Notes under the pieces: generated by a model
What the model was told of the DNA's origin: nothing
Database searches by the model: none
What the model saw: only the letters and a program-made list of their open reading frames with translations
Shown here: in pieces, positions 20,770-62,301 of the stretch
Layout: the number at the start of each line of letters is the position of its first letter
Numbering within the stretch: the first letter of the stretch is position 1
Virus record (IMG/VR): IMGVR_UViG_3300021338_000003
Coordinates: 186,001-250,000 of that record
DNA length: 64,000 bases
Reading direction: 5' to 3' (one strand)
Made by a program: the position numbers and the translations under genes

Positions 20770-21702
20770 ATGAGCATCAAGAAGGTCATCGAGAAGTACG
20801 AAACCACCGCTTCTATGAGCCGCCAGGACTTCAACCAAGCCGTTCAGAAGGTTTGGGGAGGAGAAACCCCGGAGGGGTTGGTTGTCATCAGTCCCACTGA
20901 GTTTGCGTCCCACAGGGGGCTGTCATCTGACGCAAAGTCGATGATTCGAAAAGAACCGAAGGTGCCGGATACCAGACACCGCGGTCGGACGGAGTGGCTT
21001 CCATCTCAGTATATCCAGAACTGGGATTGGAACAATGGTGGTCTCTCCATCAGTTGGAACTGGGAGCAGAGGAAGGTCATCCTTCCCGAGGGGTGGGAGG
21101 ACGACCGCAAGTTCATTCGATCTGTCAATGACTTCTATACCGCAGTGAAGGAGCAACTCCGGGTCACCGAGGAGGGGTGGATTGTCTACTCCTCTCGGGG
21201 CATCGTAGGGAGTGTGTCCCGACAATTTGGGGTTTCTATGAACCGTGCCGAGGCCGTCTTTGAAAAGAACAAGGATGAAGCTCTCCGGCAGACGGAAATC
21301 ATGAGGATTCGACTGCCCATCGCCAGTCCTGTGAATGGGAAGGTCCTCATGATTCGCGACGAGCAAAGCGTAGTCGACTTCCTGGGGACCAAGCTCAAAA
21401 AGTCTCCTGACTTGTACGTGTACGTCGAAGGATATGCCGAGGCCCCCCAAGACCCGGATGAGGAAGTCGATTCCTACAGCGCGTTTGATGGGTGGTCTCA
21501 GAAGGACCTCATCCTCGAACACATTGCCGACATTGATGCATTCGAAGCTGACCGCGACGGGCATTCGGTCATGGCCCTGTGCGGTCCCTTCAAGAGCGCG
21601 GCTGCAAAAAGAGCCTTCATGAAGAAGATTGGCCTCAGCTCAAGGCAAGAGAAGAAGAACCGCGAAACCGCCAAGGCATACGGAACCTTCCAGTCCTACT
21701 AG
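20770..21702 (+). CDS. Hypothetical protein with MSIK..KY..A|S leader
   Basis: Starts MSIKKVIEKYETTASM; GGGAG SD. Confidence 0.75.
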   Translation: MSIKKVIEKYETTASMSRQDFNQAVQKVWGGETPEGLVVISPTEFASHRGLSSDAKSMIRKEPKVPDTRHRGRTEWLPSQYIQNWDWNNGGLSISWNWEQRKVILPEGWEDDRKFIRSVNDFYTAVKEQLRVTEEGWIVYSSRGIVGSVSRQFGVSMNRAEAVFEKNKDEALRQTEIMRIRLPIASPVNGKVLMIRDEQSVVDFLGTKLKKSPDLYVYVEGYAEAPQDPDEEVDSYSAFDGWSQKDLILEHIADIDAFEADRDGHSVMALCGPFKSAAAKRAFMKKIGLSSRQEKKNRETAKAYGTFQSY

Positions 21703-21734
21703 TCCGAAGACCCCGCGCCAAGGATAGAACCAAA

Positions 21735-22181
21735 ATGAACCAGCCTCGGGCCAGGACCATGGCCCAGCAAATTACAGGTTGCTCGGTTGTTTTGACCGAC
21801 AATCCTGACGGGTGGTATCAACACCCGGGATTCATCGAGATACCTCGTGGAAAGGGTCGCAAGGAGGCCCTCATCCATGAAGTGTGTCATTGGGTTGTAG
21901 CCAACGACCTTGAGAGAAAGGAAGAAAACCTGGGCATGCCCAAAGACCCCCAGGTTGACCAGTTGAGCCTCTCGAAGGTTATGCGCGAACTTCGAGAACA
22001 ACAGGCTTGCTTTCTTCAAAAAATCCTCTATGCCATGGATGGTAGAGAGGTCCCCCGCAACCCATCATGTCGTTTTCGGCTCATGGTCCCGCTGGGTGTC
22101 GACCACTCGAAGTGGGTGTTTGACCGAGCCCGAGAGATCGGATGGGAGAAATTGTACGTCTTGGTATCAAGGCCCTGGTAG
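21735..22181 (+). CDS. HExxH metalloprotease-motif protein
   Basis: ALIHEVCHW; start ATG 21735 in frame with track ORF. Confidence 0.55.
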   Translation: MNQPRARTMAQQITGCSVVLTDNPDGWYQHPGFIEIPRGKGRKEALIHEVCHWVVANDLERKEENLGMPKDPQVDQLSLSKVMRELREQQACFLQKILYAMDGREVPRNPSCRFRLMVPLGVDHSKWVFDRAREIGWEKLYVLVSRPW

Positions 22182-22189
22182 GAGAAACA

Positions 22190-22591
22190 ATGAGCATCAA
22201 AGAAGTAATTGCAAAGTACAAAGTCACTGCCTCGGGCCATGATCAAGAGATGATTAGCCATAGTCATGACTGGGTCAAATATGTTGACACAGAGGGGTGG
22301 GATCGACTATGGGATGACAGTCTCAGACACGTCGCTCCCGAGGGCTACCTCAGGCATATTGAAGATGATGACTTGCAGTACCACATCATCATCTGGCTTG
22401 ATGAAAGACTCTATGACTTCTTGAAGGAGAAGGGCATGGAGATAGACGGAAGAAAGTGGGATGAGGACCTCTCGCAAGCTAGACAAAAGATGATAGAGGT
22501 TGCTTGCAGAAAGTCCGACATACTTGAAGGACGTATCAGGCCAGAAGAAATAGAGAAGGTTATCAAGAGCATACCCGATTACATCACCTGA
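22190..22591 (+). CDS. Hypothetical protein with MSIK..KY..A|S leader
   Basis: AGGAG SD then MSIKEVIAKYKVTASG. Confidence 0.75.
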   Translation: MSIKEVIAKYKVTASGHDQEMISHSHDWVKYVDTEGWDRLWDDSLRHVAPEGYLRHIEDDDLQYHIIIWLDERLYDFLKEKGMEIDGRKWDEDLSQARQKMIEVACRKSDILEGRIRPEEIEKVIKSIPDYIT

Positions 22592-22636
22592 GGTTCCTGG
22601 GCGCTAGGTGGAAGATATCAAATGAGGTATCTTCCT

Positions 22637-23503
22637 ATGTCCAAGATGATCACAGGACTGGCAGAAATCGACCCCTACAACCCTCTTGTGGTGTTGGAGG
22701 GGTCGAAGATTATCGAGGAAGTGCGCGAGTCTATCGTGGGGTCGGGCTCCGATCGGAGACTTGAGCGTACCGCGGTTGTGGCTTCTACCACCGAGGGTGG
22801 GTCCATCAAGCGGCGCCCCATGGATGTGTCCTGGCTGGCTGGCGCCAGTGAGGCATACAATATATCAGCCGATGTCCGGGACTACATCTTCGTTAATGTT
22901 CCGATCGTCACGGCCGATTTCCCTAACCGAAACATGGACTGCTTCACGTATGAGGAGCTGACTACTTTCAGCCCAGTTCTGGGTCGCTTCGTCTACGGGT
23001 CTTTCAAAGCCAAGCCGATGCACCTCAACCACAAGAACAAGAACCCCCTAGAGGCCAAGGGGGTCCACTTCGATGCCACACTCCGGAAGTACAAAGTATG
23101 GCCTGGGAAGCAAGGGTATCAGAGCAACAACACCCAGCCTCGCGAACTCTGGAAGGTTCGGGTCATGTTGGGAGCTTGTCGCCAGAAAGACCCCAAGGTT
23201 GCCCAGAGCATCCTTGACAAAAAGCGCACCGGGTATTCTATGGGTGCCTGGATCGACCACGCCTTCTGCTCGGTCTGCCACAATGACAACATGCGCCAGA
23301 AGTGCACCCACCGCCAGCGGGGCAAGGGTTCCATTTCCGCTGACGGCCGCTTGGTATATGACTGCGTGGCTGGTGTCAACTTCTTCGAAACCTCGGTCCT
23401 CGATGAAGAGCCGGCAGACCCTGATGCCTGGGCTCCCGATGGTGTTTGGGCCCCACACCTGCAGCCCAACATCTGGGCATCCTCCTTGGAGGCTGTGCTG
23501 TGA
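22637..23503 (+). CDS. Prohead maturation protease (HK97/herpes assemblin fold)
   Basis: NRNMDCF, KPMHLNH (catalytic His position), TGYSMGA (catalytic Ser), CSVC Zn motif; upstream of scaffold and MCP. Start ATG 22637 after GAGGT (track 22622). Confidence 0.75.
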   Translation: MSKMITGLAEIDPYNPLVVLEGSKIIEEVRESIVGSGSDRRLERTAVVASTTEGGSIKRRPMDVSWLAGASEAYNISADVRDYIFVNVPIVTADFPNRNMDCFTYEELTTFSPVLGRFVYGSFKAKPMHLNHKNKNPLEAKGVHFDATLRKYKVWPGKQGYQSNNTQPRELWKVRVMLGACRQKDPKVAQSILDKKRTGYSMGAWIDHAFCSVCHNDNMRQKCTHRQRGKGSISADGRLVYDCVAGVNFFETSVLDEEPADPDAWAPDGVWAPHLQPNIWASSLEAVL

Positions 23504-23787
23504 GCGACTATATATACCTTGAAGTCACCGTTCTGGTCAGGCACCCCGAGAAGTTCGAGGGATTCAACTTCGAAAATGCAGCAAAGGACCTGGGCCTTTC
23601 ACCTGACCGGCGAGGAAACACCCTCCCTATTCGCACTGACCCTAGAATGGCCAGTGTTCACTTCTGGGGTCGATTCCCTATGGGGCCCGGGCTGCAGGAC
23701 TCCATTCAGAGGCGTGCCGAGTCCGCACTCAGTCCCCTGGGCGTGCGTCGAGTTATCATCAGAGCACCTACGCCGAGGTTCATGTGA
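23500..23787 (+). CDS. Hypothetical small protein
   Basis: GTGA coupling after GGAGG. Confidence 0.55.
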   Translation: MSDYIYLEVTVLVRHPEKFEGFNFENAAKDLGLSPDRRGNTLPIRTDPRMASVHFWGRFPMGPGLQDSIQRRAESALSPLGVRRVIIRAPTPRFM

Positions 23788-24371
23788 CTATCCGCCATAT
23801 CATCCGGGAGCAAATGGAAATCGAGGCTGCTGTCCCCGCCTGGCTGGCGTCCATGGGTGGAGCCGCAGTTGCCGTCGGTCTTCGTTTTGCCTTGAAGAAG
23901 GTGCTCCAGTCTGCGATGAAGGCCATGGCCAAGCAAGCAGCCAAGAAGGCTGCCCAGCAGGGCGCGAAGAAAATCACCCAGAAGGGTGCCCAGAAGGTAT
24001 TGATGAATCCGAAGGTTATCAAGCCGGCCATGCGGAGAAAGATTGCTCAGAAGGGTATATCCGATTCCGAGATTGATGAGGTCATCAAAAACATGGACTC
24101 GTCAGTGGGCGAGAAAGCCCAGAAACTCGTGTTCTCCTATCTGGTTGAGAAGGGTACAGCCAACAAGACCCTAACCGAACAGGATGTGGCAGACCTCAAG
24201 GCCGGAAAGGCTCCGAAGGGTACCACTTCTCCTACCGCCAGTGGGAAGAAGGGAAAGAACGGCGAAAAGCCCCCGAAGGGCTACGAAAAAGTCAAGAGTA
24301 GCAAGAAAAATGCATATCGTCGCAAAAAGGACGATGGCACGTACGACTACTGGTACCCCTCCAAGAAGTGA
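23784..24371 (+). CDS. Lys/Ala-rich putative head-core protein
   Basis: IEAAVPAWLASMGG amphipathic segment then very basic tail; in head operon. Confidence 0.6.
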   Translation: MTIRHIIREQMEIEAAVPAWLASMGGAAVAVGLRFALKKVLQSAMKAMAKQAAKKAAQQGAKKITQKGAQKVLMNPKVIKPAMRRKIAQKGISDSEIDEVIKNMDSSVGEKAQKLVFSYLVEKGTANKTLTEQDVADLKAGKAPKGTTSPTASGKKGKNGEKPPKGYEKVKSSKKNAYRRKKDDGTYDYWYPSKK

Positions 24372-24520: not shown

Positions 24521-26689
24521 ATGGAAAATACCTCAAAGGAGTATACCGTGCCGAATGACCTCCGCAAGATTCGCGCAAAGCAGCAGCAGATGGACGCTAT
24601 CACTGCTTCCATGGATGAGGGCAACACTGACGAGATGCCCACGAACGAAGATGGGAATGGTGCCGAAGCTGGTAGTGATACCGTTGACCTCGATTCTCTT
24701 GACCTCTCTGCCTACATGGACGAGTCCAATGTAACCGCCGCCCCTATTGTCACCGCCGCAGACGACTGCGATGAGGACGAGGACGAGGATGAGGATGATG
24801 AGGACGAGGATGATGAGGACGATGGCAAGGCTACCGCTGGTTTCCAGAAGGGTGACAGCAAGTCTGATGACTCCGATGACTCTGATGATTCCGACGACTC
24901 TGATGATTCCAACGACTCTGACGACTCTGATGATTCCGACGACTCTGATGAGAAGGGCAAGGCCGAGGCCATGACTTCCGAGGCCCGTTGGTTCGAGGAC
25001 CACGTTGCCGCTGCCCTGATCGACGCCGGCCTCAACGACCTCGAAATCGACACCCGAGAGGCAGCTGCCACTTCCCTGTCGAACCGTGCTCACATCGAGG
25101 GTTCTGCCTTCATCCAGGCCATGTCCGATGATGATTTCAGTCGGATGCAGAAGGATATGGTTCCCCTCTACCAAGAGACTCTTCGTATCACCAAGAAGAT
25201 CCGCGAGGCCCAGGCCGAGGCTATGAAGGTTCAGGAAAACCTTCGCGCCAACAAGAAGGTCGAGGCTGCTGCTGACATGGGCCGCGAAATTCGTGACGCT
25301 ATGTTCCAGGATATCGAAGACTCGAACCTCGACTATCATGCCCCCCAGTGGCTTCAGACCCTCGTGGCTGGCTTCTTGGGCAGCGATTCCAAGGAGACTC
25401 AGATGGATACCCCGACCGTTGAGGAGCGTGCGGCTGCTGCGGCGCCGGAGACAGCCCCCACGAAGCCCAAGAAGCCCAAGAAGCCCGCTGCTCACAAGCC
25501 TCGGACGGCCAGTGTGAAGCCTAGCCCTCGGAAGACCAGCCCCATTCAGGCTGCTTTCGAGGCCACGGCTACAGCTGTTGCTGAGATGGTCAAGATTGGC
25601 GATCTCCCCGGCGCTGCTCGCCTCGTCTGCTTTGAGGACTCTGAGGATGCCCGTCAGGCCGTTCAGGTCATGGCTGGTCTCGTGAAGTCTGGCCAGCATT
25701 CCCGGGCTGCCCATATGGTCAACGACCTTCGCACGGCTGTTCTTACGGCTCCCAAGCAGGAGGGTGGTGAGGCCCAAGGTGAGGTCACCGCTGGTGTTGA
25801 AGCTGCTCAACCGATGCATGCTGTCCTTCTGGCCCAGCCCAAGGACTTCGGTGAGGTCAGCGAGGATGAGGTGTCCGTCATCCTCCACGCCGAGGCTTCC
25901 GAGGATCCCTACTACACTGTCATCGTGCAGGGTATGCCGGTGGGTGAGATTCACCTTGCCGACCAGGGTGACCCCGATGAGTATCGTGCGACCTTCGCCG
26001 ATGTCAATGTCTACGGTCGTGGTATCCGTCACGCCGTAGCCAACTTCGGTGTCGAGGATGCCCTGAGCAACTTCGAGGCTCGCTATTTCGTCACCGCCTT
26101 CGATAGCCACGCCGAGATGGGTCGCATCAAGGATGAGGCTGCTGCTCTGGCTGCCGAGGCTATCAACGCCAAGGTTGCCGAGGCTACTGCGGAGATCGTG
26201 GACTTCATGATCCTCGCCCACGAGGGTATCCGTCGCAACGCCTACACCGTCGACGATCCACTGAAGTTCTCCCTGTACGAGACCCTCAAGAGCGCCGGTG
26301 TACGTGAGGCCAACATCCCCAATTTGGTAGAGCAGGCCATCAACATGCCCCTAGCCGTCGATGGCAGCAACGAGCGTACCGCTGCTATGTCGATGTACCT
26401 GGAGATCCTCGCTGAGAAGGCCAAGGAGTTCCAGAATATGGACCCGGCTGCTCTGGAGCACATCACCAAGACCATCATCAACGCCCCTGTCCGTAGCCGT
26501 TCGGCCTCGGTTGAGGCGGTGGCCATGCCCCAGACTCTCCGCGAGCGTCTTGCCAGCAACAACCAGCCGGTCATCAATGTGGGAGATCCGATCACCCCGG
26601 ACCCCCACCCCTCCACTTCGAATAGCACTGCCGAGGATCTTCGCCGTGCTCTCGATCTGAGTCACGGATATCGGAACCGTCGGTCCTGA
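24521..26689 (+). CDS. Prohead scaffold/core protein
   Basis: Long acidic Ala-rich protein with D/E tracts between protease and capsid genes; many V/I-x-A|A/S motifs. Confidence 0.65.
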   Translation: MENTSKEYTVPNDLRKIRAKQQQMDAITASMDEGNTDEMPTNEDGNGAEAGSDTVDLDSLDLSAYMDESNVTAAPIVTAADDCDEDEDEDEDDEDEDDEDDGKATAGFQKGDSKSDDSDDSDDSDDSDDSNDSDDSDDSDDSDEKGKAEAMTSEARWFEDHVAAALIDAGLNDLEIDTREAAATSLSNRAHIEGSAFIQAMSDDDFSRMQKDMVPLYQETLRITKKIREAQAEAMKVQENLRANKKVEAAADMGREIRDAMFQDIEDSNLDYHAPQWLQTLVAGFLGSDSKETQMDTPTVEERAAAAAPETAPTKPKKPKKPAAHKPRTASVKPSPRKTSPIQAAFEATATAVAEMVKIGDLPGAARLVCFEDSEDARQAVQVMAGLVKSGQHSRAAHMVNDLRTAVLTAPKQEGGEAQGEVTAGVEAAQPMHAVLLAQPKDFGEVSEDEVSVILHAEASEDPYYTVIVQGMPVGEIHLADQGDPDEYRATFADVNVYGRGIRHAVANFGVEDALSNFEARYFVTAFDSHAEMGRIKDEAAALAAEAINAKVAEATAEIVDFMILAHEGIRRNAYTVDDPLKFSLYETLKSAGVREANIPNLVEQAINMPLAVDGSNERTAAMSMYLEILAEKAKEFQNMDPAALEHITKTIINAPVRSRSASVEAVAMPQTLRERLASNNQPVINVGDPITPDPHPSTSNSTAEDLRRALDLSHGYRNRRS
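24768..24950 (+). repeat. Coding low-complexity repeats: (GAT/GAC GAG)n and 9-bp TC[TC]GA[TC]GA[TC] x~10 encoding (SDD)n
   Basis: Read directly; 9-bp period 24864-24950. Confidence 0.85.
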
Positions 26690-26787
26690 TGCTTCGGGGA
26701 TATTTGATATCCCCATCACCTCTTCAATCACCTCAATAGATATCAAATAGGGTGGAAATCCCATCCGCCAAACAAGGGAAAATCACA

Positions 26788-28078: not shown

Positions 28079-29260
28079 ATGGCAAACCCCTACGGAAAGT
28101 TTTCGGGTGCTACCACCCAGATGGTGCTTGCGGGCACTGATGCTCCGGTTGTGAGTGAAGCTCGCAACTTCGGTCGCACTGTCACTGGCTCCGTCCAGCA
28201 GTCCGGCTCCGGCCTTGCGCCCACCTCCCGTGGCCTAGCCCACGGTGGCGGTGAGCGTCTGTTCGGCGCCAATGGCGAGATCAATGCCTCCAGCAAGCGC
28301 GAGCTGATGGAGAAGATCGGCCTCCTGCTTGACCAAGCCCAGCATGGTGGCTTCGAGCGCCAGATGACCCCCGAGTACAGCCGTGTGGCCCAGGCCCGTG
28401 CTGTTGCTCTCGCCGAAGCCCAGGCCAACCCCGACGGTCCCGGCATGCGGATCATCGCCGAGGCGACCGGCAACGAGGTCTTCGAGACTCTCGGCCGTGA
28501 TGGTCTCGTGCGTCAGTTCCTCCTGATCAACGACCTCAATGGTAGTGACGACGTCAACCGCGTCAAGGTCCGGAAGAAGGACGTGTCCGCGGTCATCTCA
28601 ACCACGAACATCAACACCACCAAGCAGATGGTTCGCCAGATGTGGGTGTACCCGGGCGAGTACTACGTCAAGTCCTTCGTCTCCATTGAGGAGAAGGAGC
28701 TGTCGCAGAACGGTGCCGAGATGCTCGACGAGAAGTTCACGGACATGCTTGAGCAGCACATGGTCCAAGAGGACCGGCACATGAAGAGCCACTTCGATGA
28801 CCAGGTGGGTATCGTCAACCCCGGGCTGACCTTCAACAAGTTCACCCCGCTCATCTTCACCCAGGCTCGCGTGGCTGTCGAGGAGCAGGGCAACCCCTGT
28901 GTCCGCGCTGCCCTCTCCTGGGACCTCTGGGTCGACATTCTCGCTGAGCCGGAGTTCGCCAACTACTTTGACCCGGTCCACAAGCACGCTGCCATCCTCG
29001 ATGGCAAGCTCGGCGCCATCCAGAACGTCCAGCTCTACACCGACGGCTTCCGGTACGATACCCTGCAGGTGCTCGGCACCCGTGAGGTCTACTTCACCGG
29101 TCCGGCGGCTACGGTCGGTGTCCTGGGTCAGCGGAGCCCGATCCAGACGAAGGAGACGGATCGCTACAACCTCGGCCAGGCCGAGCGTGGATGGTTCTCC
29201 TTCCAGATCCAGTCCATGACCACGTTCCCCCGTGCCGTGAGCCGCGCTCGCGGTATCTGA
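28079..29260 (+). CDS. Major capsid protein (HK97-like fold)
   Basis: 393 aa, strong codon bias, GEINASSKREL, EEKELSQ..LDEK..EQHMVQEDR, LDGKLGAIQNVQLYTDGFRY; followed by strong terminator. Confidence 0.8.
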   Translation: MANPYGKFSGATTQMVLAGTDAPVVSEARNFGRTVTGSVQQSGSGLAPTSRGLAHGGGERLFGANGEINASSKRELMEKIGLLLDQAQHGGFERQMTPEYSRVAQARAVALAEAQANPDGPGMRIIAEATGNEVFETLGRDGLVRQFLLINDLNGSDDVNRVKVRKKDVSAVISTTNINTTKQMVRQMWVYPGEYYVKSFVSIEEKELSQNGAEMLDEKFTDMLEQHMVQEDRHMKSHFDDQVGIVNPGLTFNKFTPLIFTQARVAVEEQGNPCVRAALSWDLWVDILAEPEFANYFDPVHKHAAILDGKLGAIQNVQLYTDGFRYDTLQVLGTREVYFTGPAATVGVLGQRSPIQTKETDRYNLGQAERGWFSFQIQSMTTFPRAVSRARGI

Positions 29261-29743: not shown

Positions 29744-30738
29744 TGCCCCAGAACCCCACCGGACTGGCCTGGTTGGTGCAGAATGTCCTACCCCGGACGT
29801 TCCAAGGTATCCTCGGTAGATGGATGCTCAAGAAACTCTTCGATGCCCTCCGAGACCGGAAGGTACTACCCCGAAGCATCGACCAATGGCTCAAGAAGCC
29901 CGTCAAGGACCTGAACCAGGTGACGGCCGAATGGGACCCCCTAGAGGCACTTCGACTGGTGCCCGAACTTGGTCATGGCACCGTTGAAGCATCTTCTGGG
30001 GACCTGATTCAGGAATCGGTCCGGACCCTCATTCTCGCCACTGTTGGCAGCCCCAAACCAGGCAAATACCCCAAGGGTATCTCCACCAAGGGAAAGGAGG
30101 TCTGGGATGACATTGTCGAGGATTTTGAGAAGGAAATCAAGGACCTGGGTGAGGGTGACCAGGCCCGTGAATGGGCTGCTGCTATCCTTCTCTATCAGCG
30201 TCGGGCCAAAAAGGCCCGAATCCGCCCATTCGGGAAAGGAACCAAAAGACTCTCCCCACACTCCGGAGATGAGGGTCTGGTCAAGAGAAGAGTTCAGAAG
30301 AGGCTGTCCAATTCCTACAAACGAGGGTTTGCCAAACTCAATGCAGCTCTGGATGCCCTCCCGGGTCGCAAATCTGTACTCCGAGCCATGCAACCCTGGT
30401 CTGGCAAGAATGGGTACTGGTTTGCGGTCTGCTACCGTGTCTCGGTTAAGGACCTGGGCCGTGAGGAGAAGAAGGGGCTAGAAACCCTCCTCAAATCCAA
30501 CTTTCGATTTCGCGATGGAAACAACGGAAGTCTTGTTCACGATGATGCCCGAATGAAGCACATTGTACGCCTTCGCAAGTCCCGACGAGAGTGGCGTCTG
30601 TGCCTAGAGTTCTACATGACGAATCGTGAGGCTGAGTTGATGACCGGAGAGAAGCATAGGGATGATATCCTTGAGAAGCTCCGTAAGGTCACCAGGATCC
30701 TCAAAAAGGAACAAAGAATTCCGAGGAGTATGACATGA
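29743..30738 (+). CDS. Basic hypothetical protein
   Basis: Coupled starts/stops on both sides. Confidence 0.65.
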   Translation: MPQNPTGLAWLVQNVLPRTFQGILGRWMLKKLFDALRDRKVLPRSIDQWLKKPVKDLNQVTAEWDPLEALRLVPELGHGTVEASSGDLIQESVRTLILATVGSPKPGKYPKGISTKGKEVWDDIVEDFEKEIKDLGEGDQAREWAAAILLYQRRAKKARIRPFGKGTKRLSPHSGDEGLVKRRVQKRLSNSYKRGFAKLNAALDALPGRKSVLRAMQPWSGKNGYWFAVCYRVSVKDLGREEKKGLETLLKSNFRFRDGNNGSLVHDDARMKHIVRLRKSRREWRLCLEFYMTNREAELMTGEKHRDDILEKLRKVTRILKKEQRIPRSMT

Positions 30739-30962
30739 ACAACATCCGCCGTATGGTCTCCCGGAAGGTCATGGCATCTGCCGAGAGCGTATATCTGGAC
30801 CGGATTCGAAATTCCGGGTTCTTGGCCGACTTTGTCAAGGAGATGAAGGGCACTTCCCAAGAAGCCCGGAATTTCGAGGACCAGTTGAATTCCATGACCC
30901 TAGACACCCTCAAGGAAATGTTTCCCGAGAGCGAGCTTGCGGAATATGAGGGGGCACGATGA
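30735..30962 (+). CDS. Small protein with leader-like N-terminus
   Basis: GAGGAG SD; MNNIRRMVSRKVMA|S. Confidence 0.65.
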   Translation: MNNIRRMVSRKVMASAESVYLDRIRNSGFLADFVKEMKGTSQEARNFEDQLNSMTLDTLKEMFPESELAEYEGAR

Positions 30963-33236: not shown

Positions 33237-33677
33237 ATGGGCAAAATGAACGTGTCCAAAATCAGTGAAGTAACGGCAAAATACGAAGTCCTTGCAAGCC
33301 GTCAAGGAATGCATAATGACTTTTTGGAGCGCGCCTACAATATACTAGACGACGCAGGAATTGACAGATCGTCCGTCAAGACTGGAACTCACGGAAGAGA
33401 CTGGTATTGGGTGAGCTTCGAACTTCCGAAGGGGGACTTGTGGTACGAGTGGAGACCCGGTATCGTCTCTCCAGAGACCCAGTCCGGGGAGTCTATCACA
33501 CTTCGACGGAGGCACAGACATAGCAGGCACCCGTCATCCCCCTCTTCCTTTGGGGACGCCCTGGTGAATGTATACAACCCTGCAGAATCCTCCTTCGGGG
33601 ATGTCTGGCTCTCCGACCAAGATATCAGAAATGCCCATTCCGATATCTTGGACGTAATCGAAGGAAAGTACCTCTGA
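33237..33677 (+). CDS. Hypothetical protein with KY..A|S leader
   Basis: GGAG SD; MGKMNVSKISEVTAKYEVLASRQ. Confidence 0.7.
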   Translation: MGKMNVSKISEVTAKYEVLASRQGMHNDFLERAYNILDDAGIDRSSVKTGTHGRDWYWVSFELPKGDLWYEWRPGIVSPETQSGESITLRRRHRHSRHPSSPSSFGDALVNVYNPAESSFGDVWLSDQDIRNAHSDILDVIEGKYL

Positions 33678-33728: not shown

Positions 33729-34592
33729 ATGGGATACGAACAGGCACTTTCGACCAAGAAGCTGGCCACCCACTGCATCCTGTGTGGTCAGCCGCTCCGG
33801 GACCCCATCTCGGTTGAGACTGGTGTTGGTCCGATTTGTCGTGCCAAGAACGGCTACAATGAGGCTGGCAACCCCGAGACCCGTGTCCAGTGTAGCAAGC
33901 TCATCCATGCTGCTGCTCAGCCGGGCTTGACTGCCACCGAGGTCTACGACTACGCCGACCAGATCGAGGCCCTCGGGTTCCCTGATGTGGCCGCCAAAAT
34001 CCGGGAACGGTTCCATCGGGCCTACGAATACGAGCAGCGGGGAACCCTCCCAATCAAGATGAAGAGGGAGAATTACCGCCAGTGGACCGACGCCATCTGG
34101 ATGCACATCCCCTACGATGCCGAAACAACCAAGAAGTTCAACCAAGCCTTGAAGGACCGCATTTGGTCCAGTTATCGGACGGGCACGAAGGATGACACTG
34201 GAACTTTCTGGTGGATCGTCGACCCGAAGCGGGCTGACGCCGTCGACGCTCTCCTCCGGGAGTTCTATACCGGTCGTATGTGCCACTCCTCGTTCGGAGA
34301 CTTCATCATCGGCGAGGAACTCGGAGGTGGTGATACCGAGAAGGCCCCTCAGGAGGAAGCCCCTCCAGTCCCTGGTCCCCCTGCAGCGACGCCCGGAGCC
34401 TCTACCCCCTCGTTTGGAGGTAGTGGCGGAAAGGGAGGCAGCGGCGGCGAGTGGACCCCCATCCCCGGCCCGAGCGGATCCAAGACGTCGACCCCCGATG
34501 ACCCCATCACCCCCTCGCGCAGCCCCCGTGAGGTGGCCGCGGAGCGTGGGCGTGCCCGGGCCGAAGAACTTTTGAAATCTCTGGGATTGTGA
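33729..34592 (+). CDS. DUF6011-like Zn-finger protein with Pro/Gly-rich tail
   Basis: CILCGQPLRDPISVETGVGPICR. Confidence 0.7.
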   Translation: MGYEQALSTKKLATHCILCGQPLRDPISVETGVGPICRAKNGYNEAGNPETRVQCSKLIHAAAQPGLTATEVYDYADQIEALGFPDVAAKIRERFHRAYEYEQRGTLPIKMKRENYRQWTDAIWMHIPYDAETTKKFNQALKDRIWSSYRTGTKDDTGTFWWIVDPKRADAVDALLREFYTGRMCHSSFGDFIIGEELGGGDTEKAPQEEAPPVPGPPAATPGASTPSFGGSGGKGGSGGEWTPIPGPSGSKTSTPDDPITPSRSPREVAAERGRARAEELLKSLGL

Positions 34593-35191
34593 TGGACCCT
34601 CGGCTACTACCCTTCGACACCTGGTACAAAGCCAGGTTGCGCTCCGACGCCCCCAAGGATGTGGCCGACATTTTCCGAGGCCACACCAGGCCCTTCGTAT
34701 ATCTGCTCCGCACCCCAAGCAACATTCCAGTGCCCCGCTTCAAATTGGGCCGATTTGTTGCCTGGAGCGGGGCAGATCGTACCCATGGTCACCTGACCGC
34801 GGAAAAGATTAGGGACTCCTTCGAAATCCTTCAGGTCCATGACGACCAGGAAAACCTCAATGAACGGACCAAGAGATTGTTCCGCAGGAAAAAGCAAATG
34901 AGCAAGATGGACGAAGTTGTTGCGAAGTACGAGAACGAGGTCACAGCCTCCCAGAATGGCCAATTCTACAACGATGAGGGGGAGGAACTTGACGCAGAAG
35001 AAGTTGAGAGTCATGTCGAAGCCACTCTCAAGGAGTTGGAGAAGCTCAAGAAGCAGACAGAAGACTTCCAACGTAAGCTCAAGGCCGGCAGTCTGAAAAC
35101 GGAGGATGGGTTTATGTCGTTCATGTCCGTGATCATCCATGGGTATGACCAAACGGGACCTGTGGGCATCAGCTTCGAGTCCAACGATTAG
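34589..35191 (+). CDS. Hypothetical protein; probable internal start at 34898 giving a leader-bearing product
   Basis: In-frame ATG 34898 preceded by AGGA, reads MSKMDEVVAKYENEVTAS. Confidence 0.6.
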   Translation: MMDPRLLPFDTWYKARLRSDAPKDVADIFRGHTRPFVYLLRTPSNIPVPRFKLGRFVAWSGADRTHGHLTAEKIRDSFEILQVHDDQENLNERTKRLFRRKKQMSKMDEVVAKYENEVTASQNGQFYNDEGEELDAEEVESHVEATLKELEKLKKQTEDFQRKLKAGSLKTEDGFMSFMSVIIHGYDQTGPVGISFESND

Positions 35192-35266: not shown

Positions 35267-36127
35267 TCAGCTGGACATCTTCCAGCCTTCGTCATCCTCC
35301 AATTCGGACATAGCCTTCTCCCAATCCGATGGGTGAACCTTCAGGGCCCGCATGGTCTGGTTCATTTCATTGGATACCTGACGAGTGTTGGTAATGGCCC
35401 GTCCAGCCAGGGACAAACGTTCGGTAACCTTGATTACATCCTTGAGGATGTCGGTCTTCGAACGACTGTAGAGGTAGGGAATGAGACGGCCGATGGCCAC
35501 CGACATCACGACAGCAGTGGCTGCCATACCCACGTCTTTGATGAGCCCTACCTTGAGGTACTTGAGAACTCCACGGGCCAGGCTATCTACGACACGACCA
35601 GCACGGTCCTTGCGCTTCTGAAGAAGGGTGTTGTTGACCGAGGCAGCTGTCTTGAAGAAGACTTCCAAGTCACGCTCGGAAGCAGACGTTCCCAGGGCTC
35701 CCAGGAGCTGGGATATAGCCTCGACATTTCCAGCCATTTCATCTTTCCAGAAGGTTACCATGGTGCGGAGGTACAAGGTCAGAACACGCATCAGGACGGT
35801 CACTGCGAGGTAGGCCCCTGCCTGCCCCAGCCATGCCGGGATGGCGGCCTCGACCTGCTTGCGCTCAATGAGATGGGACAGTCGAGTGGCAGCCGTGGCC
35901 TTGGTCTTACCGTCGGCACCAGGCTCGTCCTTGGAATTCCACTCATCATCGACCTCTTCGAAGAAGTCCTTCTTCTCGCTGTCAGACAGGTCCGAAATCT
36001 CATCGATTCCATGCTCCTTCATCTGACCCTTCATATAATTCTGCCAGTCCTTCTCATGCTCGGTCGTGGCAGGATTTCCATCCTTAGCCACCCGGTAGCG
36101 ATCGACGACATCTTTGATCGACATCAT
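35267..36127 (-). CDS. Putative prohead core/internal protein
   Basis: ATG 36127 after AGGAG, coupled to upstream stop; MMSIKDVVDRY leader; EHGIDEISDLSDSEKKDFFEEVDDEW recalls T4-like prohead-core motif; VEAAIPAWL segment. Confidence 0.65.
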   Translation of the reverse strand: MMSIKDVVDRYRVAKDGNPATTEHEKDWQNYMKGQMKEHGIDEISDLSDSEKKDFFEEVDDEWNSKDEPGADGKTKATAATRLSHLIERKQVEAAIPAWLGQAGAYLAVTVLMRVLTLYLRTMVTFWKDEMAGNVEAISQLLGALGTSASERDLEVFFKTAASVNNTLLQKRKDRAGRVVDSLARGVLKYLKVGLIKDVGMAATAVVMSVAIGRLIPYLYSRSKTDILKDVIKVTERLSLAGRAITNTRQVSNEMNQTMRALKVHPSDWEKAMSELEDDEGWKMSS

Positions 36128-36618
36128 GTCTCCTGGTATTTGCGGATGACTTCGCGAAGACATGCCACCCGGGCGAATGTTGTTTCGACTATATCCACCA
36201 AGGCGTCTTTTCCTTGGTCAGACACGAAATCCACTACCGATCCGTACCCGGACTGGGCACGAACAGTCAGCACCATGCGCCCCACGTCCTGGGACGTCAC
36301 ATCCGGACCACGCCAAACAGCATGGACCAAAAGCGAATCCAGGTCCATCAATGGGACCCGGAGCTGGCCGAGGGCCTGCTTCGTGGCCCTCCACTTGTAG
36401 TGGTTGGTTACCTGGGGCGGAGCGGGGTTCATGTCCGCCAAAGCCCGGTCGAAGGGGAGCGCAGCCTCAGAAGTCAAAGCCGCCTCTTGGACCCGCATGT
36501 CCACTAGTCCACGAGCAAACTCCGGGAGTTCACTGTAGGCCAGATACGAGTCCGCCAATGAGGAGGCGAAAACCACCTGCATCATTGGCGAAAGAAAGGG
36601 TCTCACGGCCAACCCCAC
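36124..36618 (-). CDS. Hypothetical protein
   Basis: Operon-like coupling; start uncertain. Confidence 0.55.
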   Translation of the reverse strand: MGLAVRPFLSPMMQVVFASSLADSYLAYSELPEFARGLVDMRVQEAALTSEAALPFDRALADMNPAPPQVTNHYKWRATKQALGQLRVPLMDLDSLLVHAVWRGPDVTSQDVGRMVLTVRAQSGYGSVVDFVSDQGKDALVDIVETTFARVACLREVIRKYQET

Positions 36619-46393: not shown

Positions 46394-46935
46394 GCATCAA
46401 GGAGAAGGGCACTCGAAAGCCAGGCCAGAGGCTATGGTTTGAATACCACTGTTTCGAAAGTCATGATTCCGGTGATGCAGAATTGTGGTATCGATCACAC
46501 CAAAAGGTGACAGTCATTGAGCCGCTGCCATTCGGAAAGTTGGATGATGAGGCATCAGTAGAGGACCGAGGAGGCAGAGTGTACTTGGTCCGCTTCGCTG
46601 ATGGTTTCGAAGGCCATGTGACTTGGGATGAACTTCTAGATAGTCCAACCGAGTTCGAACGACCTGACCCTCCTCCTCCAAGTTCAAAGGTCAGAAGGGC
46701 CATAGCCCAGCACGCCATTGAGGCTTCGAAACTCCGGATGATGCGTCAGCTGGCCGAGAAGGACCTCGAAATGACGGATTCCGAAATCTGCGAAATCATG
46801 TTTGGTGGGGATTCCAAGCAATGTGCAGAGTTCCTAGACATGGACCGGGAAGGACAACTTTCATGGCTCATGACCAACTTGTATGTTGGCATGAGCGAAG
46901 AGACTCTTCAAGAATTCATTTCCAAAGGGCGGTAG
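46390..46935 (+). CDS. Hypothetical protein (SH3/Tudor-like N-domain)
   Basis: ATGA coupling; RVYLVRFADGFEGHVTWDEL; starts MSIKE. Confidence 0.6.
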   Translation: MSIKEKGTRKPGQRLWFEYHCFESHDSGDAELWYRSHQKVTVIEPLPFGKLDDEASVEDRGGRVYLVRFADGFEGHVTWDELLDSPTEFERPDPPPPSSKVRRAIAQHAIEASKLRMMRQLAEKDLEMTDSEICEIMFGGDSKQCAEFLDMDREGQLSWLMTNLYVGMSEETLQEFISKGR

Positions 46936-46938
46936 ACC

Positions 46939-47325
46939 ATGAGCATCAAAGAAGTCATCGCAAAATACAGCATCCAAGCTAGTGCGTCAGAATGGAGTAT
47001 TGGTATATATGATACCAATGGAAACCCCAGCAAGAAGTTCAAATCACTTCCTGATAACCCCTCCCAAGAAGACGTCGCTAGAGCGTCCGAAGGTAGTGGT
47101 GGCAGGGACTACATAAGTGTCTTCAAGTCAGGAAGAGACTGGGCTGTGATGGCAGGGACTTATGGTCCCAGAGATATCGCGTTCTATGTTGTGGCATTGA
47201 AGGGCAAGCACAACAGCATCGCCTCTGACATCGAGAATGCTGTGCATACCCTAGAGGACTTCGACCCCTACGACTACACCGAGGAAGAAGTCGTAACGGC
47301 AATCATGAGACACTTCAAATTGTGA
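46939..47325 (+). CDS. Hypothetical protein with MSIK..KY..A|S leader
   Basis: MSIKEVIAKYSIQASAS. Confidence 0.7.
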   Translation: MSIKEVIAKYSIQASASEWSIGIYDTNGNPSKKFKSLPDNPSQEDVARASEGSGGRDYISVFKSGRDWAVMAGTYGPRDIAFYVVALKGKHNSIASDIENAVHTLEDFDPYDYTEEEVVTAIMRHFKL

Positions 47326-61156: not shown

Positions 61157-61169
61157 ACGATCCTCATAC

Positions 61170-61198
61170 TTGCGCCTCCTTGCATGCCATGTTATAAT
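61170..61198 (+). promoter_or_regulatory. Sigma70-type promoter copy
   Basis: TTGCGC-17 nt (ending TGCCATGT)-TATAAT. Confidence 0.85.
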
Positions 61199-61218
61199 GG
61201 GTATACAAGGAGGTAGCA

Positions 61219-61551
61219 ATGATCGACAGCATTCCCGGATACGACAAGTGGAAGACCAGTGGCCCGCCCGAGAACCCCATGGTCGATATCCTGAAGGTTT
61301 ACGTAGAGTTCGACCCGACCGACGACCTCCACCCCTTCACAATGCACCTCACCCACGAGCAGGTTCGGGTTCTGAACGAATATGAGGAAGAGGTGGTGTC
61401 GTCCAAGGAACACTCGGAGCCCCTCCCGAGCTTCCCCAACGACCCTGCGGAGGCTCTGTCTGACCTCCGCGAGGTAGTGGACGGCATGAGCCACTGTTGG
61501 CTGGAGTACGACGAATACGACTCCGTAAATTTCACCTGGGGGCTGGCATGA
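61219..61551 (+). CDS. Acidic hypothetical early protein
   Basis: AAGGAGGT SD. Confidence 0.7.
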   Translation: MIDSIPGYDKWKTSGPPENPMVDILKVYVEFDPTDDLHPFTMHLTHEQVRVLNEYEEEVVSSKEHSEPLPSFPNDPAEALSDLREVVDGMSHCWLEYDEYDSVNFTWGLA

Positions 61552-61919
61552 AGGTCGTTCTGTGGCTGGATGATATGAGGGACCCCAAGTCCTACGCCTA
61601 CAAGGACCTGCTGGACACCTTCTGTCCAGGTCGCGAAAAGGTGGTCTGGGCAAAGGATGCGTTTGCCTTCAAGGAGGAGTACCTTCAGGTATTCGAAGAC
61701 CCCGACTCCCAGTTGGTTGGGGTCTTCTTTGACAACGACCTTGGGACCCCCGGAGGGGCGGACGGCCGCCATGTGTTCACCTGGATGGAACGGCACGTTC
61801 GAGAGAACAACATCCCCGAGTTTGAGTTGTACGCCCAGACCTCGAACCCCGCTGCCAAACGCGAGTTGAACGGTGGGTTCGCGTCCTTGCGGAGGTTCTG
61901 GGCAGGCATGGAGGACTAG
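61548..61919 (+). CDS. Stand-alone receiver-like domain (cyclic-phosphate-processing REC type)
   Basis: LWLDDMRDP, VFFDNDLG, DGRHVFTWM, AQTSNPAA. Confidence 0.7.
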   Translation: MKVVLWLDDMRDPKSYAYKDLLDTFCPGREKVVWAKDAFAFKEEYLQVFEDPDSQLVGVFFDNDLGTPGGADGRHVFTWMERHVRENNIPEFELYAQTSNPAAKRELNGGFASLRRFWAGMED

Positions 61920-61962
61920 GATTCCTAAACAGATTCAGGACATAGCCAGGAGGGCTAGAAAA

Positions 61963-62301
61963 ATGAGCAAGATGAATGGCTTTGGGGTAGCATTTGAGTC
62001 CGAAGGCGACTTCTACGGTATGGAGGGGGCCATCCAGGAGATGCAAAGTGCCACTTGCGGTGCTATCTTCGATGGGCGCGGGGAACTCATAGTCGTTACA
62101 AACGACGAGCGATGCAGCCTAGAAGACTTCATCTCGGAATACGGCAGGATGTATGGCGAGAGCTATGCCCCCAGCAAAAAAGAAGTGGTGAAGACACATA
62201 ACGTGACCGGAGACGTCACTGCCACGAGCAAGATGGATGAAATTGTGGCGAAGTACAAGAACGAAATCACGGCGGCGGGGGACATTCGTTTGAAGGACTA
62301 G
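61963..62301 (+). CDS. Hypothetical protein with leader motif at its C-terminus
   Basis: AGGAGG SD; ends VTATSKMDEIVAKYKNEITAAGDIRLKD. Confidence 0.65.
   Translation: MSKMNGFGVAFESEGDFYGMEGAIQEMQSATCGAIFDGRGELIVVTNDERCSLEDFISEYGRMYGESYAPSKKEVVKTHNVTGDVTATSKMDEIVAKYKNEITAAGDIRLKD

What the first reader, a model, noticed from the sequence alone, without database searches (positions are those of the whole stretch)
20770..62301. Candidate capsid-addressing leader shared by many unrelated proteins (possible new cargo-loading system)
Seen: MSIKKVIEKYETTA|S (20770), MSIKEVIAKYKVTA|S (22190), MGKMNVSKISEVTAKYEVLA|S (33237), MSKMDEVVAKYENEVTA|S (34898), MMSIKDVVDRYRVA (36127, minus), MSIKEVIAKYSIQA|S (46939) and SKMDEIVAKYKNEITA|A (62227). 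Weaker cases: MNNIRRMVSRKVMA|S (30735), MTIRHIIREQMEIEA|A (23784), MSIKE (46390). Downstream bodies show no similarity to each other. Synonymous codons differ (AGC vs TCG, GTC/GTA/GTT), pointing to protein-level selection. Established: T4 internal proteins use a 10-aa N-terminal capsid-targeting sequence (MKTYQEFIAE) removed by the prohead protease, and are early-expressed, as 20770 appears to be here. Inference: a portable amphipathic tag plus cleavage site lets the phage load a swappable set of effectors into the head for injection.
Basis: partly seen in the sequence, partly recalled or inferred. Interest (0 to 1): 0.9.

Follow-up and report, generated by a model that had tools for sequence, protein, structure and literature searches.

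The report
Shared leader peptide on jumbo-phage proteins
An uncultured 250-kb phage and its closest relatives put the same ~15-residue leader on many otherwise unrelated small proteins around the head-assembly genes. It most likely works like the phage T4 tag that loads proteins into the capsid, but nothing here shows that directly.

Summary
Seven copies of a 15-18 residue peptide lie at the stated coordinates. The consensus is MS-I-K-E-V-I-A-K-Y-x(3-7)-[VI]-[TLQ]-A-[SA]. Against a leader profile the seven copies score 19-29 bits, everything else in six frames scores 2.1 or less, and shuffles reach 6.6 at most. An eighth copy lies elsewhere on the same 250-kb contig. Conservation is at protein level: Ser switches between AGC and TCG/TCC, K/R and I/V swaps occur, upstream DNA is not shared, and the bodies are unrelated.

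The window holds the head module: terminase, portal, a T4 gp21-like prohead protease, an acidic scaffold-like protein and the major capsid protein (MCP). Closer uncultured relatives (protease 51-63% identical) carry the same leader on different, non-homologous cargo. One relative has at least 8 copies.

The leader ends in hydrophobic-x-Ala|Ser. The same motif sits at a conserved MCP site (GE[IF]NA|S) and is enriched in the scaffold-like proteins of the clade.

Best reading (about 0.5): a T4 internal-protein-style capsid-targeting propeptide, removed by the prohead protease after Ala. That is a new variant of a known kind, not a new system.

- 62227 is a decayed C-terminal remnant.
- 34898 is a nested in-frame start.
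- Amphipathicity is weak.
- Packaging and cleavage are untested.

The parts
20770..21702 (+). Leader protein 1 (310 aa). Leader = 20770-20814, MSIKKVIEKYETTA|S. The body has no detectable homolog.
   Evidence: 23.3 bits. No homolog in 5.8e9 proteins or in 1.84e9 representatives by full phmmer. No Pfam or PHROG family.
20721..20749 (+). Perfect sigma-70 consensus promoter (TTGACA-17-TATAAT) upstream of 20770. It belongs to a TGCCATGTTATAAT motif class.
22190..22591 (+). Leader protein 2 (133 aa, acidic). Leader = 22190-22234, MSIKEVIAKYKVTA|S. It sits immediately upstream of the protease gene.
   Evidence: 28.9 bits. Strong RBS AGGAGA. A low-confidence AF2 model puts residues 3-13 in a helix with a break at TAS.
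22622..23503 (+). Prohead (head maturation) protease. The likely start is 22637 (MSKM...).
   Evidence: phrog_18299, E 3.6e-44. 30-38% identical to the annotated proteases of Lu11-type jumbo phages. The AF2 model (pLDDT 80) has T4 gp21 (5jbl) as its only plausible PDB match, and that match is weak: E 8e-3, prob 0.93.
23784..24371 (+). Basic (pI 10) protein with the looser leader TIRHIIREQMEIEA|A, followed by VPAWL and a hydrophobic segment.
   Evidence: Homologous to L245:10906-12060, and shares the xIRxx..A[IVL]PAW motif with the 36127(-) protein.
24521..26689 (+). Acidic (pI 4.4) scaffold-like protein between protease and MCP. It carries 5 [VI]TA motifs, including ...DAITA|S at residue 27.
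   Evidence: [VI]TA: 5 observed against 0.6 expected. Syntenic with the acidic 'ATPase'-labelled proteins of Lu11, HRDY3 and Motura, which are strongly enriched in hydrophobic-x-A-S (16 against 3.3, 0 of 500 shuffles).
28079..29260 (+). Major capsid protein. The candidate maturation site GEINA|SS is at residues 66-72 (nt 28274-28294).
   Evidence: phrog_2522, E 7e-35. GE[IFM]NA|[SG] is conserved in the window, L245, L247, L249, Lu11, Motura and HRDY3.
30735..30962 (+). 75-aa protein with the looser leader MNNIRRMVSRKVMA|S.
   Evidence: Compare L248:11699 (MNGIRQIVQGY).
33237..33677 (+). Leader protein 3 (146 aa). Leader = 33237-33299, MGKMNVSKISEVTAKYEVLA|S.
   Evidence: 24.4 bits. Weak coding score over the second half of the ORF.
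34589..35191 (+). 200-aa ORF with the leader inside it (34898-34951, MSKMDEVVAKYENEVTA|S). Probably a nested in-frame start that yields a 97-aa leader protein.
   Evidence: 26.7 bits. Homolog L245:17541-18104 has the leader at the same internal place, preceded by AGGAGG.
35267..36127 (-). Leader protein 4 (286 aa). Leader = 36127-36083, MMSIKDVVDRYRVAK. An acidic ~85-aa extension follows, then a second leader-like element (LIERKQVEA|AIPAWL) and hydrophobic segments.
   Evidence: (19.1 bits). Ortholog L248:19919-20548(-) lacks the 85-aa extension.
36136..36153 (-). Frameshifted remnant of a leader core (GAAGTCATCCGCAAATAC = EVIRKY), 30 nt upstream of the intact 36127 leader.
   Evidence: and direct reading of the sequence.
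46390..46935 (+). 181-aa protein that shares only the first five leader codons (MSIKE). Not a member by the profile.
   Evidence: (0.2 bits)
46939..47325 (+). Leader protein 5 (128 aa). Leader = 46939-46983, MSIKEVIAKYSIQA|S.
   Evidence: 27.5 bits
48664..49386 (+). 240-aa protein with the looser leader MNRIRQAVVDAE.
   Evidence: The same N-terminus (MNRIRQTIVEAA) occurs in L147 on the same contig.
61963..62301 (+). ORF that starts MSKMN and ends ...DVTA|TSKMDEIVAKYKNEITA|AGDIRLKD*. The leader copy (62224-62277) has ACG in place of ATG and is followed by only 8 codons, so it is probably a decayed gene start fused to the upstream ORF.
   Evidence: (22.5 bits)
13719..15851 (+). Portal protein. 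Its N-terminal extension carries two VTA motifs.
   Evidence: phrog_16240, E 2e-100. [VI]TA: 2 observed against 0.3 expected.
9599..13510 (+). Terminase large subunit. At 1303 aa it is long, and it probably carries inserts.
   Evidence: phrog_17415, E 7e-136

Best explanation
The peptide is a capsid-targeting propeptide of the T4 internal-protein kind.

Proposed mechanism, all inferred:
1. A short helical segment (I-K-E-V-I-A-K-Y) docks the newly made protein onto the assembling prohead core. The likely partner is the acidic scaffold-like protein or the protease.
2. Once the shell has closed, the gp21-like prohead protease cuts after the Ala of the hydrophobic-x-Ala|Ser motif, 4-9 residues past the Tyr.
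3. The cargo is released inside the head and travels with the DNA into the next host.

What is shown:
- The leader exists and is under protein-level selection.
- It sits on unrelated bodies and clusters around the head module.
- It is conserved in related phages that carry different cargo.
- Its terminal motif recurs at a conserved MCP site and in the scaffold-like proteins.

Docking, cleavage, packaging and injection are inferred, not shown.
For: (1) Specificity. Seven copies score 19-29 bits against 2.1 or less for everything else. An eighth lies elsewhere on the contig (L147).

(2) Protein-level selection. There are synonymous and conservative changes within the genome. The closest relative encodes Ser2 with TCC where the window uses AGC. 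Upstream DNA is not conserved.

(3) Unrelated bodies. p20770 has no homolog among 1.84e9 representatives.

(4) Context. Terminase, portal, protease, scaffold-like protein and MCP are all in the window. Two pattern scans cover the whole 250-kb contig and place 7 of 8 detected copies in this quarter of the genome. Those patterns were derived from window copies.

(5) Clade-wide with cargo turnover.
- L245/L248 (protease 63% identical) has at least 8 copies just downstream of the MCP, on proteins with no homolog in the window.
- L247 and L249 have one copy each. The L249 copy is on an AAA ATPase next to the protease.

(6) Cleavage-site logic.
- Ala sits at a fixed distance after the Tyr in 15 of 16 leaders, followed by S, A or G in 13.
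- GE[IF]NA|[SG] is conserved in the MCP across seven phages.
- Hydrophobic-x-A-S is enriched in the scaffold-like proteins of Lu11 (16 against 3.3), HRDY3 and Motura.
- [VI]TA is enriched in the window's scaffold-like protein (5 against 0.6).

(7) The protease model's only plausible PDB match is T4 gp21.

(8) Precedent.
- T-even Ip proteins share only an N-terminal packaging leader (PMC12373910).
- SPN3US gp53 and gp54 share an identical N-terminus that the authors liken to the T4 capsid-targeting sequence, or CTS (PMC5694885).
- The N-terminal 30 residues of P1 DarB target a reporter protein to the capsid (PMC9024508).
Against: - There is no experimental or proteomic evidence. The phage and its close relatives are known only from metagenomes.
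- Known relatives of this protease fold cut after Glu: T4 at L/I-x-E and SPN3US at A-x-E (PMC10052503). No conserved Glu ends the leader, so cleavage after Ala rests only on motif statistics.
- Enrichment of the motif in the scaffold-like proteins of the closest relatives is modest (13 against 7.7 and 10 against 6.2).
- One copy (L147) lies among tRNA and TilS-like genes, far from the head module.
- 20770 has an early-type promoter.
- The Foldseek match to gp21 is weak (TM 0.30/0.46).
- The hydrophobic moment is not clearly above that of shuffled peptides.
- The cultured relatives examined (50 kb of Lu11, 40 kb of GR7B) show no multi-copy leader.
Confidence: 0.5

Rival explanations
1. The leader is a recognition or processing tag with no role in packaging. 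For example, it could be an N-terminal propeptide or degron read by the phage protease, or by a host protease or chaperone, to time the activation or removal of accessory proteins in the cytoplasm.
For: - The conserved Ala-Ser boundary and the nearby protease are equally compatible with processing outside the capsid.
- 20770 is driven by an early-type promoter.
- One copy sits outside the structural region.
Against: - Prohead proteases of this fold are known to act inside proheads (PMC5694885, PMC10052503).
- The same motif marks the MCP and the scaffold-like proteins, which ties it to head maturation.
- The copies cluster around head genes in two phages.
Confidence: 0.17
2. The leader directs proteins to some other place: the membrane, an export route, or a phage-made compartment.
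For: - The peptide is short, N-terminal, probably helical and moderately amphipathic.
- Two family members carry hydrophobic segments after a leader-like element.
Against: - The leader has no hydrophobic core or twin-arginine motif.
- Most cargo proteins are acidic and soluble-looking.
- Amphipathicity is not above that of shuffled peptides.
- The clade (Lu11/Motura type) is not the nucleus-forming phiKZ group, on my own knowledge. Chimallin was not searched for.
Confidence: 0.1
3. The shared N-terminus is a by-product of how these genes arise or are expressed. New genes may be captured behind an existing start, RBS and first codons by recombination. Alternatively, the first codons may be kept for efficient translation initiation. 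Either way the peptide has no function of its own.
For: - Partial leaders exist: MSIKE at 46390, and MSKM at the protease and at 61963.
- A frameshifted remnant lies beside the 36127 copy.
- A near-repeat, ATGAGCAAGATG and ACGAGCAAGATG, flanks the 61963-62235 segment.
- These features point to recombination within leader DNA.
- The second to fifth codons are A-rich.
Against: - Conservation extends over 15-18 residues, with synonymous and conservative substitutions.
- It persists in a phage whose protease is only 63% identical, using different Ser codons.
- The Tyr and the Ala-Ser positions, 10-15 codons in, are conserved.
- Upstream DNA is not conserved.
- Recombination at leaders can coexist with a leader function, as at the T-even ip loci.
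Confidence: 0.13

Closest known systems
T-even phage internal proteins (Ip1-3 and further Ips) with the N-terminal capsid-targeting sequence (CTS), processed by prohead protease gp21
   Same: - Several small, mutually unrelated proteins share only a short N-terminal leader.
- The genes are variable between related phages.
- A gp21-like protease is encoded nearby.
- The leader ends at a motif that also marks the head proteins.
- The core E-V-I-A resembles the E-F-I-A of the T4 leader quoted in the finding.
   Different: - The leader is longer (15-20 residues against 10) and not demonstrably homologous.
- The inferred cut is after Ala (hydrophobic-x-A|S), not after Glu (L/I-x-E).
- The phage belongs to a Lu11-related clade of jumbo phages with a small (393 aa) MCP.
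- One member uses a nested in-frame start.
- Packaging is untested here.
Propeptides of head and ejection proteins in giant phages phiKZ, 201phi2-1 and SPN3US (gp175/gp245 protease)
   Same: - These are jumbo phages in which many head proteins lose N-terminal propeptides to a gp21-like protease.
- The SPN3US paralogs gp53 and gp54 share an identical 15-residue N-terminus, which the authors liken to a CTS.
- SPN3US gp47 exposes a transmembrane segment after cleavage. The 36127(-) and 23784 proteins may do the same.
   Different: - Those proteases cut at A/S/G-x-E, and no such motif ends this leader.
- Their propeptides are mostly 100-250 residues long and shared only by paralogs, not by unrelated proteins.
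- They form a different phage lineage with a ~750-aa MCP.
Herpesvirus assemblin maturation and release sites, consensus (V/L/I)-x-A|S (my own knowledge; not stated in the paper I read)
   Same: - The motif that ends the leader, and the conserved MCP site, have the same form: a hydrophobic P3, any P2, Ala at P1 and Ser at P1'.
- T4 gp21 shares the assemblin fold.
   Different: - This is a resemblance of the site only.
- There is no evidence that the protease here is closer to assemblin than to gp21.
- In herpesviruses the sites lie in the scaffold and protease, not on cargo.
Phage P1 Dar system (N-terminal 30 residues of DarB as packaging signal)
   Same: An N-terminal signal is sufficient to place an accessory, anti-defence protein in the capsid.
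   Different: In P1 the signal sits on a single large protein, incorporation depends stepwise on other Dar proteins, and no multi-gene shared leader exists.
Encapsulin cargo-loading peptides
   Same: A short portable peptide addresses diverse cargo to the inside of an HK97-fold shell.
   Different: Encapsulin peptides are C-terminal and are not cleaved. Encapsulins have no portal, protease or DNA, and their consensus sequence differs.

Membership tests
T4-type CTS / internal-protein system | A short N-terminal leader shared by proteins with no other similarity | tested here: met
   Profile scores and BLASTP of the bodies. The same holds in relative L245/L248.
T4-type CTS / internal-protein system | A gp21-family prohead protease is encoded by the phage | tested here: met
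   phrog_18299, E 3.6e-44. The AF2 model's top PDB match is T4 gp21 5jbl, which is weak: E 8e-3, prob 0.93. No Pfam or PDB sequence match.
T4-type CTS / internal-protein system | The leader ends at the protease's cleavage motif, which is also used in the MCP and core proteins | tested here: inconclusive
   Hydrophobic-x-A|S ends the leader, sits at a conserved MCP site and is enriched in the scaffold-like proteins. The protease's specificity is inferred, not measured, and differs from T4's L/I-x-E.
T4-type CTS / internal-protein system | Sequence homology of the leader to the T4 CTS | tested here: inconclusive
   Only an E-[FV]-I-A tetrapeptide is shared with the T4 leader quoted in the finding. 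That is too short to assess.
T4-type CTS / internal-protein system | Proteins are present in the virion, trimmed, and injected; the leader is sufficient for targeting | not testable with these tools
   The phage is uncultured and known only as a metagenome contig.
phiKZ/SPN3US-type processed head proteins | Cleavage C-terminal to A/S/G-x-E | tested here: not met
   No conserved Glu lies at or near the end of the leader. The conserved MCP site is ...NA|S.
phiKZ/SPN3US-type processed head proteins | Membership of the phiKZ-like lineage (large MCP, shared core genes) | tested here: not met
   The MCP is 393 aa and belongs to phrog_2522. The best cultured relatives are Lu11, HRDY3, Motura and GR11A at 28-31% identity.
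Sec/Tat signal peptides | Hydrophobic core of 10-20 residues after a basic N-region, or a twin-arginine motif | tested here: not met
   The leader is charged throughout and has no hydrophobic stretch or RR motif.
Encapsulin cargo-loading peptide | C-terminal peptide; shell without portal or protease | tested here: not met
   The leader is N-terminal to a translation product in 7 of 8 cases. Portal, terminase and protease are all present.

The most novel reading that the evidence does not exclude
The leader may be a clade-specific cargo-loading code with four properties:
- It works at true N-termini and at nested internal starts.
- A gp21-fold protease reads it and removes it by cutting after Ala, an assemblin-like hydrophobic-x-A|S specificity not reported for phage proteases of this fold (my knowledge plus the papers read).
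- It recombines between genes, so that each phage carries its own set of packaged, injected proteins.
- The whole injected protein set of uncultured jumbo phages could then be read from sequence alone.
Probability: 0.3. Interest if true: 0.75.

Novelty: new variant of a known kind. Interest (0 to 1): 0.6.

Why it matters
If the reading is right, the leader labels the proteins that an uncultured jumbo-phage clade packs into its head and delivers with its DNA. In T-even phages that class has turned out to be specific anti-restriction inhibitors. Here the cargo proteins are orphans: one has no relative among 1.84 billion representative proteins. A sequence tag would be the only handle for picking them out of metagenomes.

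It would also show that a gp21-fold protease can use an Ala|Ser site of the herpesvirus assemblin type instead of a Glu site. The leader itself would be a second natural peptide tag for loading foreign proteins into phage heads.

If the reading is wrong, the finding still documents a strongly conserved, mobile N-terminal module of unknown function.

Tried and rejected
Searches that found nothing useful:
- Megablast of 20 kb of the window against 50,697 phage records gave no match. The window has no tRNA.
- Pattern scans for the leader in IMG/VR and in JGI metagenomes found it only on this contig. All other hits were chance KEVIAKY peptides or an unrelated redox-domain family (TIKEVIDNYPETAMVF...).
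- A word-indexed protein search with residues 1-40 of p22190 returned only the protein itself.
- p20770 found only itself in two protein searches.
- Pfam and PHROGs gave nothing for the leader proteins or for their counterparts in relatives. The one exception is an AAA domain in L249:11330.
- PDB sequence searches with the protease and the MCP found nothing usable.
- The PaBG paper and the assemblin paper gave no cleavage consensus I could cite.

Analyses that did not support a claim:
- A de novo search for shared N-termini found no multi-copy leader in 50 kb of Lu11 or 40 kb of GR7B. It found only one pair in GR7B, MA[NT]PLKQLK.
- The hydrophobic-moment test was not clearly above shuffles.
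- The single-sequence AF2 model of p22190 was too poor to use beyond a hint of a helix.

Ideas rejected:
- The protease N-terminus (GSKIIEEVRE) looked like a leader copy. I rejected this because those residues are a confident strand of the folded domain and are conserved in homologs.
- GATATCAAAT is a candidate late-gene motif upstream of three head genes. It does not precede any leader gene.

Not done:
- The remaining 186 kb of the contig could be scanned only with two leader-derived patterns. Walking it would have exceeded the look-up cap.

Full report
WHAT THE WINDOW IS

The window is bases 186,001-250,000 of a 250,817-bp metagenome contig, IMGVR_UViG_3300021338_000003, also recorded as Ga0213839_1000090. 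It has no near relative among 50,697 deposited phage genomes at DNA level.

It carries a head-morphogenesis module:
- terminase large subunit at 9599-13510 (phrog_17415, E 7e-136) and portal at 13719-15851 (phrog_16240, E 2e-100)
- head maturation protease at 22622-23503 (phrog_18299, E 3.6e-44) and MCP at 28079-29260 (phrog_2522, E 7e-35)

By tblastn, the protease and MCP are 28-38% identical to those of Lu11, HRDY3, Motura, Yoloswag, GR7B/GR11A and similar jumbo phages. The gene order is shared with Lu11, Motura and HRDY3: protease, acidic protein, virion structural protein, MCP.

CHECK OF THE OBSERVATION

A five-residue regex for the core, [VI][VIT][ADEGS][KR]Y, has 10 hits in six frames, and seven are these copies. 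A profile built from the leaders scores the seven at 19.1-28.9 bits. The next best hit in six frames scores 2.1 bits, and 20 residue-shuffled sets reach at most 6.6 bits. The seven copies were in the training set, so the meaningful result is the empty gap below them.

- 62227 is not a gene start. The codon in the Met position is ACG, only eight codons follow before the stop, and the copy is in frame with an upstream ORF that itself starts ATGAGCAAGATG, the same 12 bases as at 34898. I read it as a decayed gene start.
- 34898 lies in frame inside a 200-aa ORF (34589-35191) whose N-terminal half also looks coding.

The bodies are unrelated by BLASTP.

PROTEIN LEVEL, NOT DNA LEVEL

Upstream DNA aligns only at the RBS. 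Within the leader:
- 22190 and 46939 differ by three synonymous and no non-synonymous changes in ten codons.
- 34898 and 62227 differ by five synonymous and four conservative changes over 17 codons.
- Ser is AGC in some copies and TCG in another.
- Lys/Arg and Ile/Val exchanges occur.

The closest relative encodes the same peptide with TCC and TCG Ser codons where the window uses AGC. This rules out a purely nucleotide-level element.

MORE COPIES AND A LOOSER CLASS

Two degenerate DNA patterns scanned against IMG/VR cover the whole contig. Four MSIK-type copies and three SK[IM]xEV-type copies were found. One is new and lies 32 kb upstream of the window, among tRNA genes and a TilS-like gene: L147, MNKMDEVIAKYTTNDEVTA|S. 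So 7 of 8 detected copies lie in this quarter of the genome, with the caveat that the patterns came from window copies.

A looser N-terminal signature, I[KR]x[VITAM][VI] within the first eight residues, is found in 7 of 63 predicted genes against 0.11 expected from internal positions. 46390 shares only MSIKE.

There are also signs of rearrangement at leader DNA. A frameshifted EVIRKY remnant lies 30 nt upstream of the 36127 copy. MSKM starts the protease and the 61963 ORF.

RELATIVES

The leader pattern occurs on no other contig in IMG/VR or in the JGI metagenome collection. A protein search with the protease did find closer uncultured relatives at 63, 58 and 51% identity and below. Their loci show the same head module.

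The 63% relative (ENA ERZ23498442 scaffold_37; loci L245 and L248) carries at least eight copies, most of them just downstream of its MCP:
- MSKSIKEVTAQYSDKD
- MSKMQEVIAEYSDK
- MSKSIEAVITKYSVNA|A
- MSKSIEAVITKYSRTA|A, on a 329-aa protein
- MSIKTVIAKYSKIA|G
- MSKSIRTVVSKH
- an internal MSKSIKAVIAKYTKTA|S
- MSTIRAIVAEH...ALPAWA followed by a hydrophobic segment

L247 has MHIKATIQRYRRILAA|A. L249 has MSKSTNDVINKYRKM on an AAA ATPase next to the protease.

Except for the hydrophobic-segment family, none of these cargo proteins has a homolog in the window, and the window's cargo has none there. p20770 has no relative among 1.84 billion representatives. So the leader is conserved while the cargo turns over.

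The 187-aa protein of L245 is 31% identical to the window's 34589-35191 ORF and has the leader at the same internal position, preceded by AGGAGG. This supports a nested in-frame start.

A more distant relative (L250) has a different shared N-terminus, M[SG]FLKKVEA. Fifty kb of Lu11 and 40 kb of GR7B show no multi-copy leader.

THE ALA|SER BOUNDARY

In 15 of 16 leaders from the window and its relatives, an Ala sits 4-9 residues after the Tyr. It is followed by S, A or G in 13 of them and usually preceded by V/I/T-x.

The same form occurs at a fixed site about 70 residues into the MCP. The site reads GEINA|S in the window, GEINA|G, GEINA|S and GEFNA|S in the three closer relatives, and GE[FM]NA|S in Lu11, HRDY3 and Motura.

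The acidic protein between protease and MCP carries an 'ATPase' PHROG label, but its composition and position mark it as scaffold-like. It is strongly enriched in hydrophobic-x-A-S in three cultured relatives:
- Lu11: 16 against 3.3 expected, 0 of 500 shuffles
- HRDY3: 7 against 1.1, and 7 against 2.1
- Motura: 6 against 1.8

In the window it carries five [VI]TA motifs against 0.6 expected, one of them at residue 27. Enrichment in the three closer relatives is weaker.

From established knowledge of T4 and the giant phages, the protease's motif marks the MCP propeptide, the core proteins and the packaged proteins alike (PMC5694885, PMC10052503). On that basis I infer that this clade's protease cuts after Ala.

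This differs from the Glu-specific sites reported for T4 and SPN3US. It has the form of the herpesvirus assemblin consensus, which I cite from my own knowledge because the paper I read did not state it.

The protease model (26-sequence alignment, pLDDT 80) has T4 gp21 as its only plausible PDB match, and that match is weak.

HOW IT MOST LIKELY WORKS

The best-supported reading is a capsid-targeting propeptide. The leader brings the protein into the assembling prohead, and the protease removes it after the Ala. The precedent is exact in outline:
- SPN3US gp53 and gp54 share an identical 15-residue N-terminus (PMC5694885).
- The first 30 residues of P1 DarB target a reporter protein to the capsid (PMC9024508).

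Two window proteins, 36127(-) and 23784, have a leader-like element ending in ...EA|A directly before a VPAW/IPAW hydrophobic segment. This recalls SPN3US gp47, whose mature form begins with a transmembrane segment (PMC5694885).

No step of this mechanism is demonstrated here. The rivals are a processing or degradation tag unrelated to packaging, another kind of localisation signal, and a by-product of gene capture or translation initiation. They are scored in their own sections. The last is weakened by the protein-level conservation across phages, but recombination at leader DNA clearly happens.

NOVELTY AND SCORE

The phenomenon is of a known kind. Three things are new:
- the leader family itself
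- its occurrence in a Lu11-related clade of uncultured jumbo phages
- the inferred Ala|Ser processing and the nested-start variant

I rate it a new variant of a known kind, with interest 0.6. It is a clean, extensible sequence signature that could identify packaged proteins in uncultured phages. Its function rests on circumstantial evidence.

Noticed in passing
window 16103, 20736, 33694, 59461, 60015, 61185 (+ strand): A promoter-like motif, TGCCATGTTATAAT (an extended -10 element), recurs six times with 0-1 mismatch. That count belongs to a scan at up to 3 mismatches giving 9 matches against 2.5 expected. At 20721 it forms a perfect TTGACA-17-TATAAT. It looks like a class of strong host-type promoters interspersed in the structural region.
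   Followed up: partly
window 22614-22623, 24435-24448, 26702-26748: Exact GATATCAAAT occurs only just upstream of the protease, the scaffold-like gene and the 26752 gene, and twice forms part of an inverted pair. It may be a late-gene regulatory site. It is absent from the leader genes.
   Followed up: partly
window 9599-13510; L245:3642-7577; L249:5576-9040: The terminase large subunit is 1303 aa and aligns to relatives in three blocks separated by inserts. The ortholog in L245 has intein and LAGLIDADG Pfam hits, and the portal of L249 has them too. Inteins in packaging genes seem common in this clade.
   Followed up: no
window 41171-46393: A 1740-aa SNF2/DEAD-type helicase lies inside the structural region. 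A homolog (26% identical) sits just upstream of the protease in Achromobacter phage Motura.
   Followed up: no
window 23784-24371 and 35267-36127(-); L245:10906-12060; L248:19919-20548(-): A second shared element, x-I-R-x-[IV]-[IV]-x-E...A-[IVL]-P-A-W followed by a hydrophobic segment, defines a protein family with two paralogs per genome. One paralog is very basic (pI 10).
   Followed up: partly
window 61963-62301: ATGAGCAAGATG at 61963 and ACGAGCAAGATG at 62224 flank about 260 nt of coding sequence. It looks as if a segment was inserted into, or duplicated at, a leader gene start. The leader copy is bracketed by DVTA| and EITA|.
   Followed up: partly
window 15861-22591: About 6.7 kb of genes lie between portal and protease, including an inorganic pyrophosphatase (PF18823, 19880-20719) and a 429-aa protein with a signal-peptide-like N-terminus (18273). 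In relative L245 the portal abuts the protease, so this is a variable insertion slot.
   Followed up: partly
L250:11602-11808 and 12239-12421: A more distant relative (protease 46% identical) has two small proteins downstream of its protease that share a different N-terminus, M[SG]FLKKVEA[AT]. This may be its own version of a leader.
   Followed up: no
L104 (Vibrio phage GR7B) 8009 and 23764: Two proteins of 170 and 512 aa start MANPLKQLK and MATPLKQLK. This was the only shared N-terminus found in that 40-kb stretch.
   Followed up: no
window 33729-34592: The N-terminus carries a CxxC...GPxC zinc-ribbon-like motif that matches the ends of several PHROG families of unknown function (phrog_636, E 2e-6). 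The gene follows one of the TGCCATGTTAAAAT promoter-like sites.
   Followed up: no
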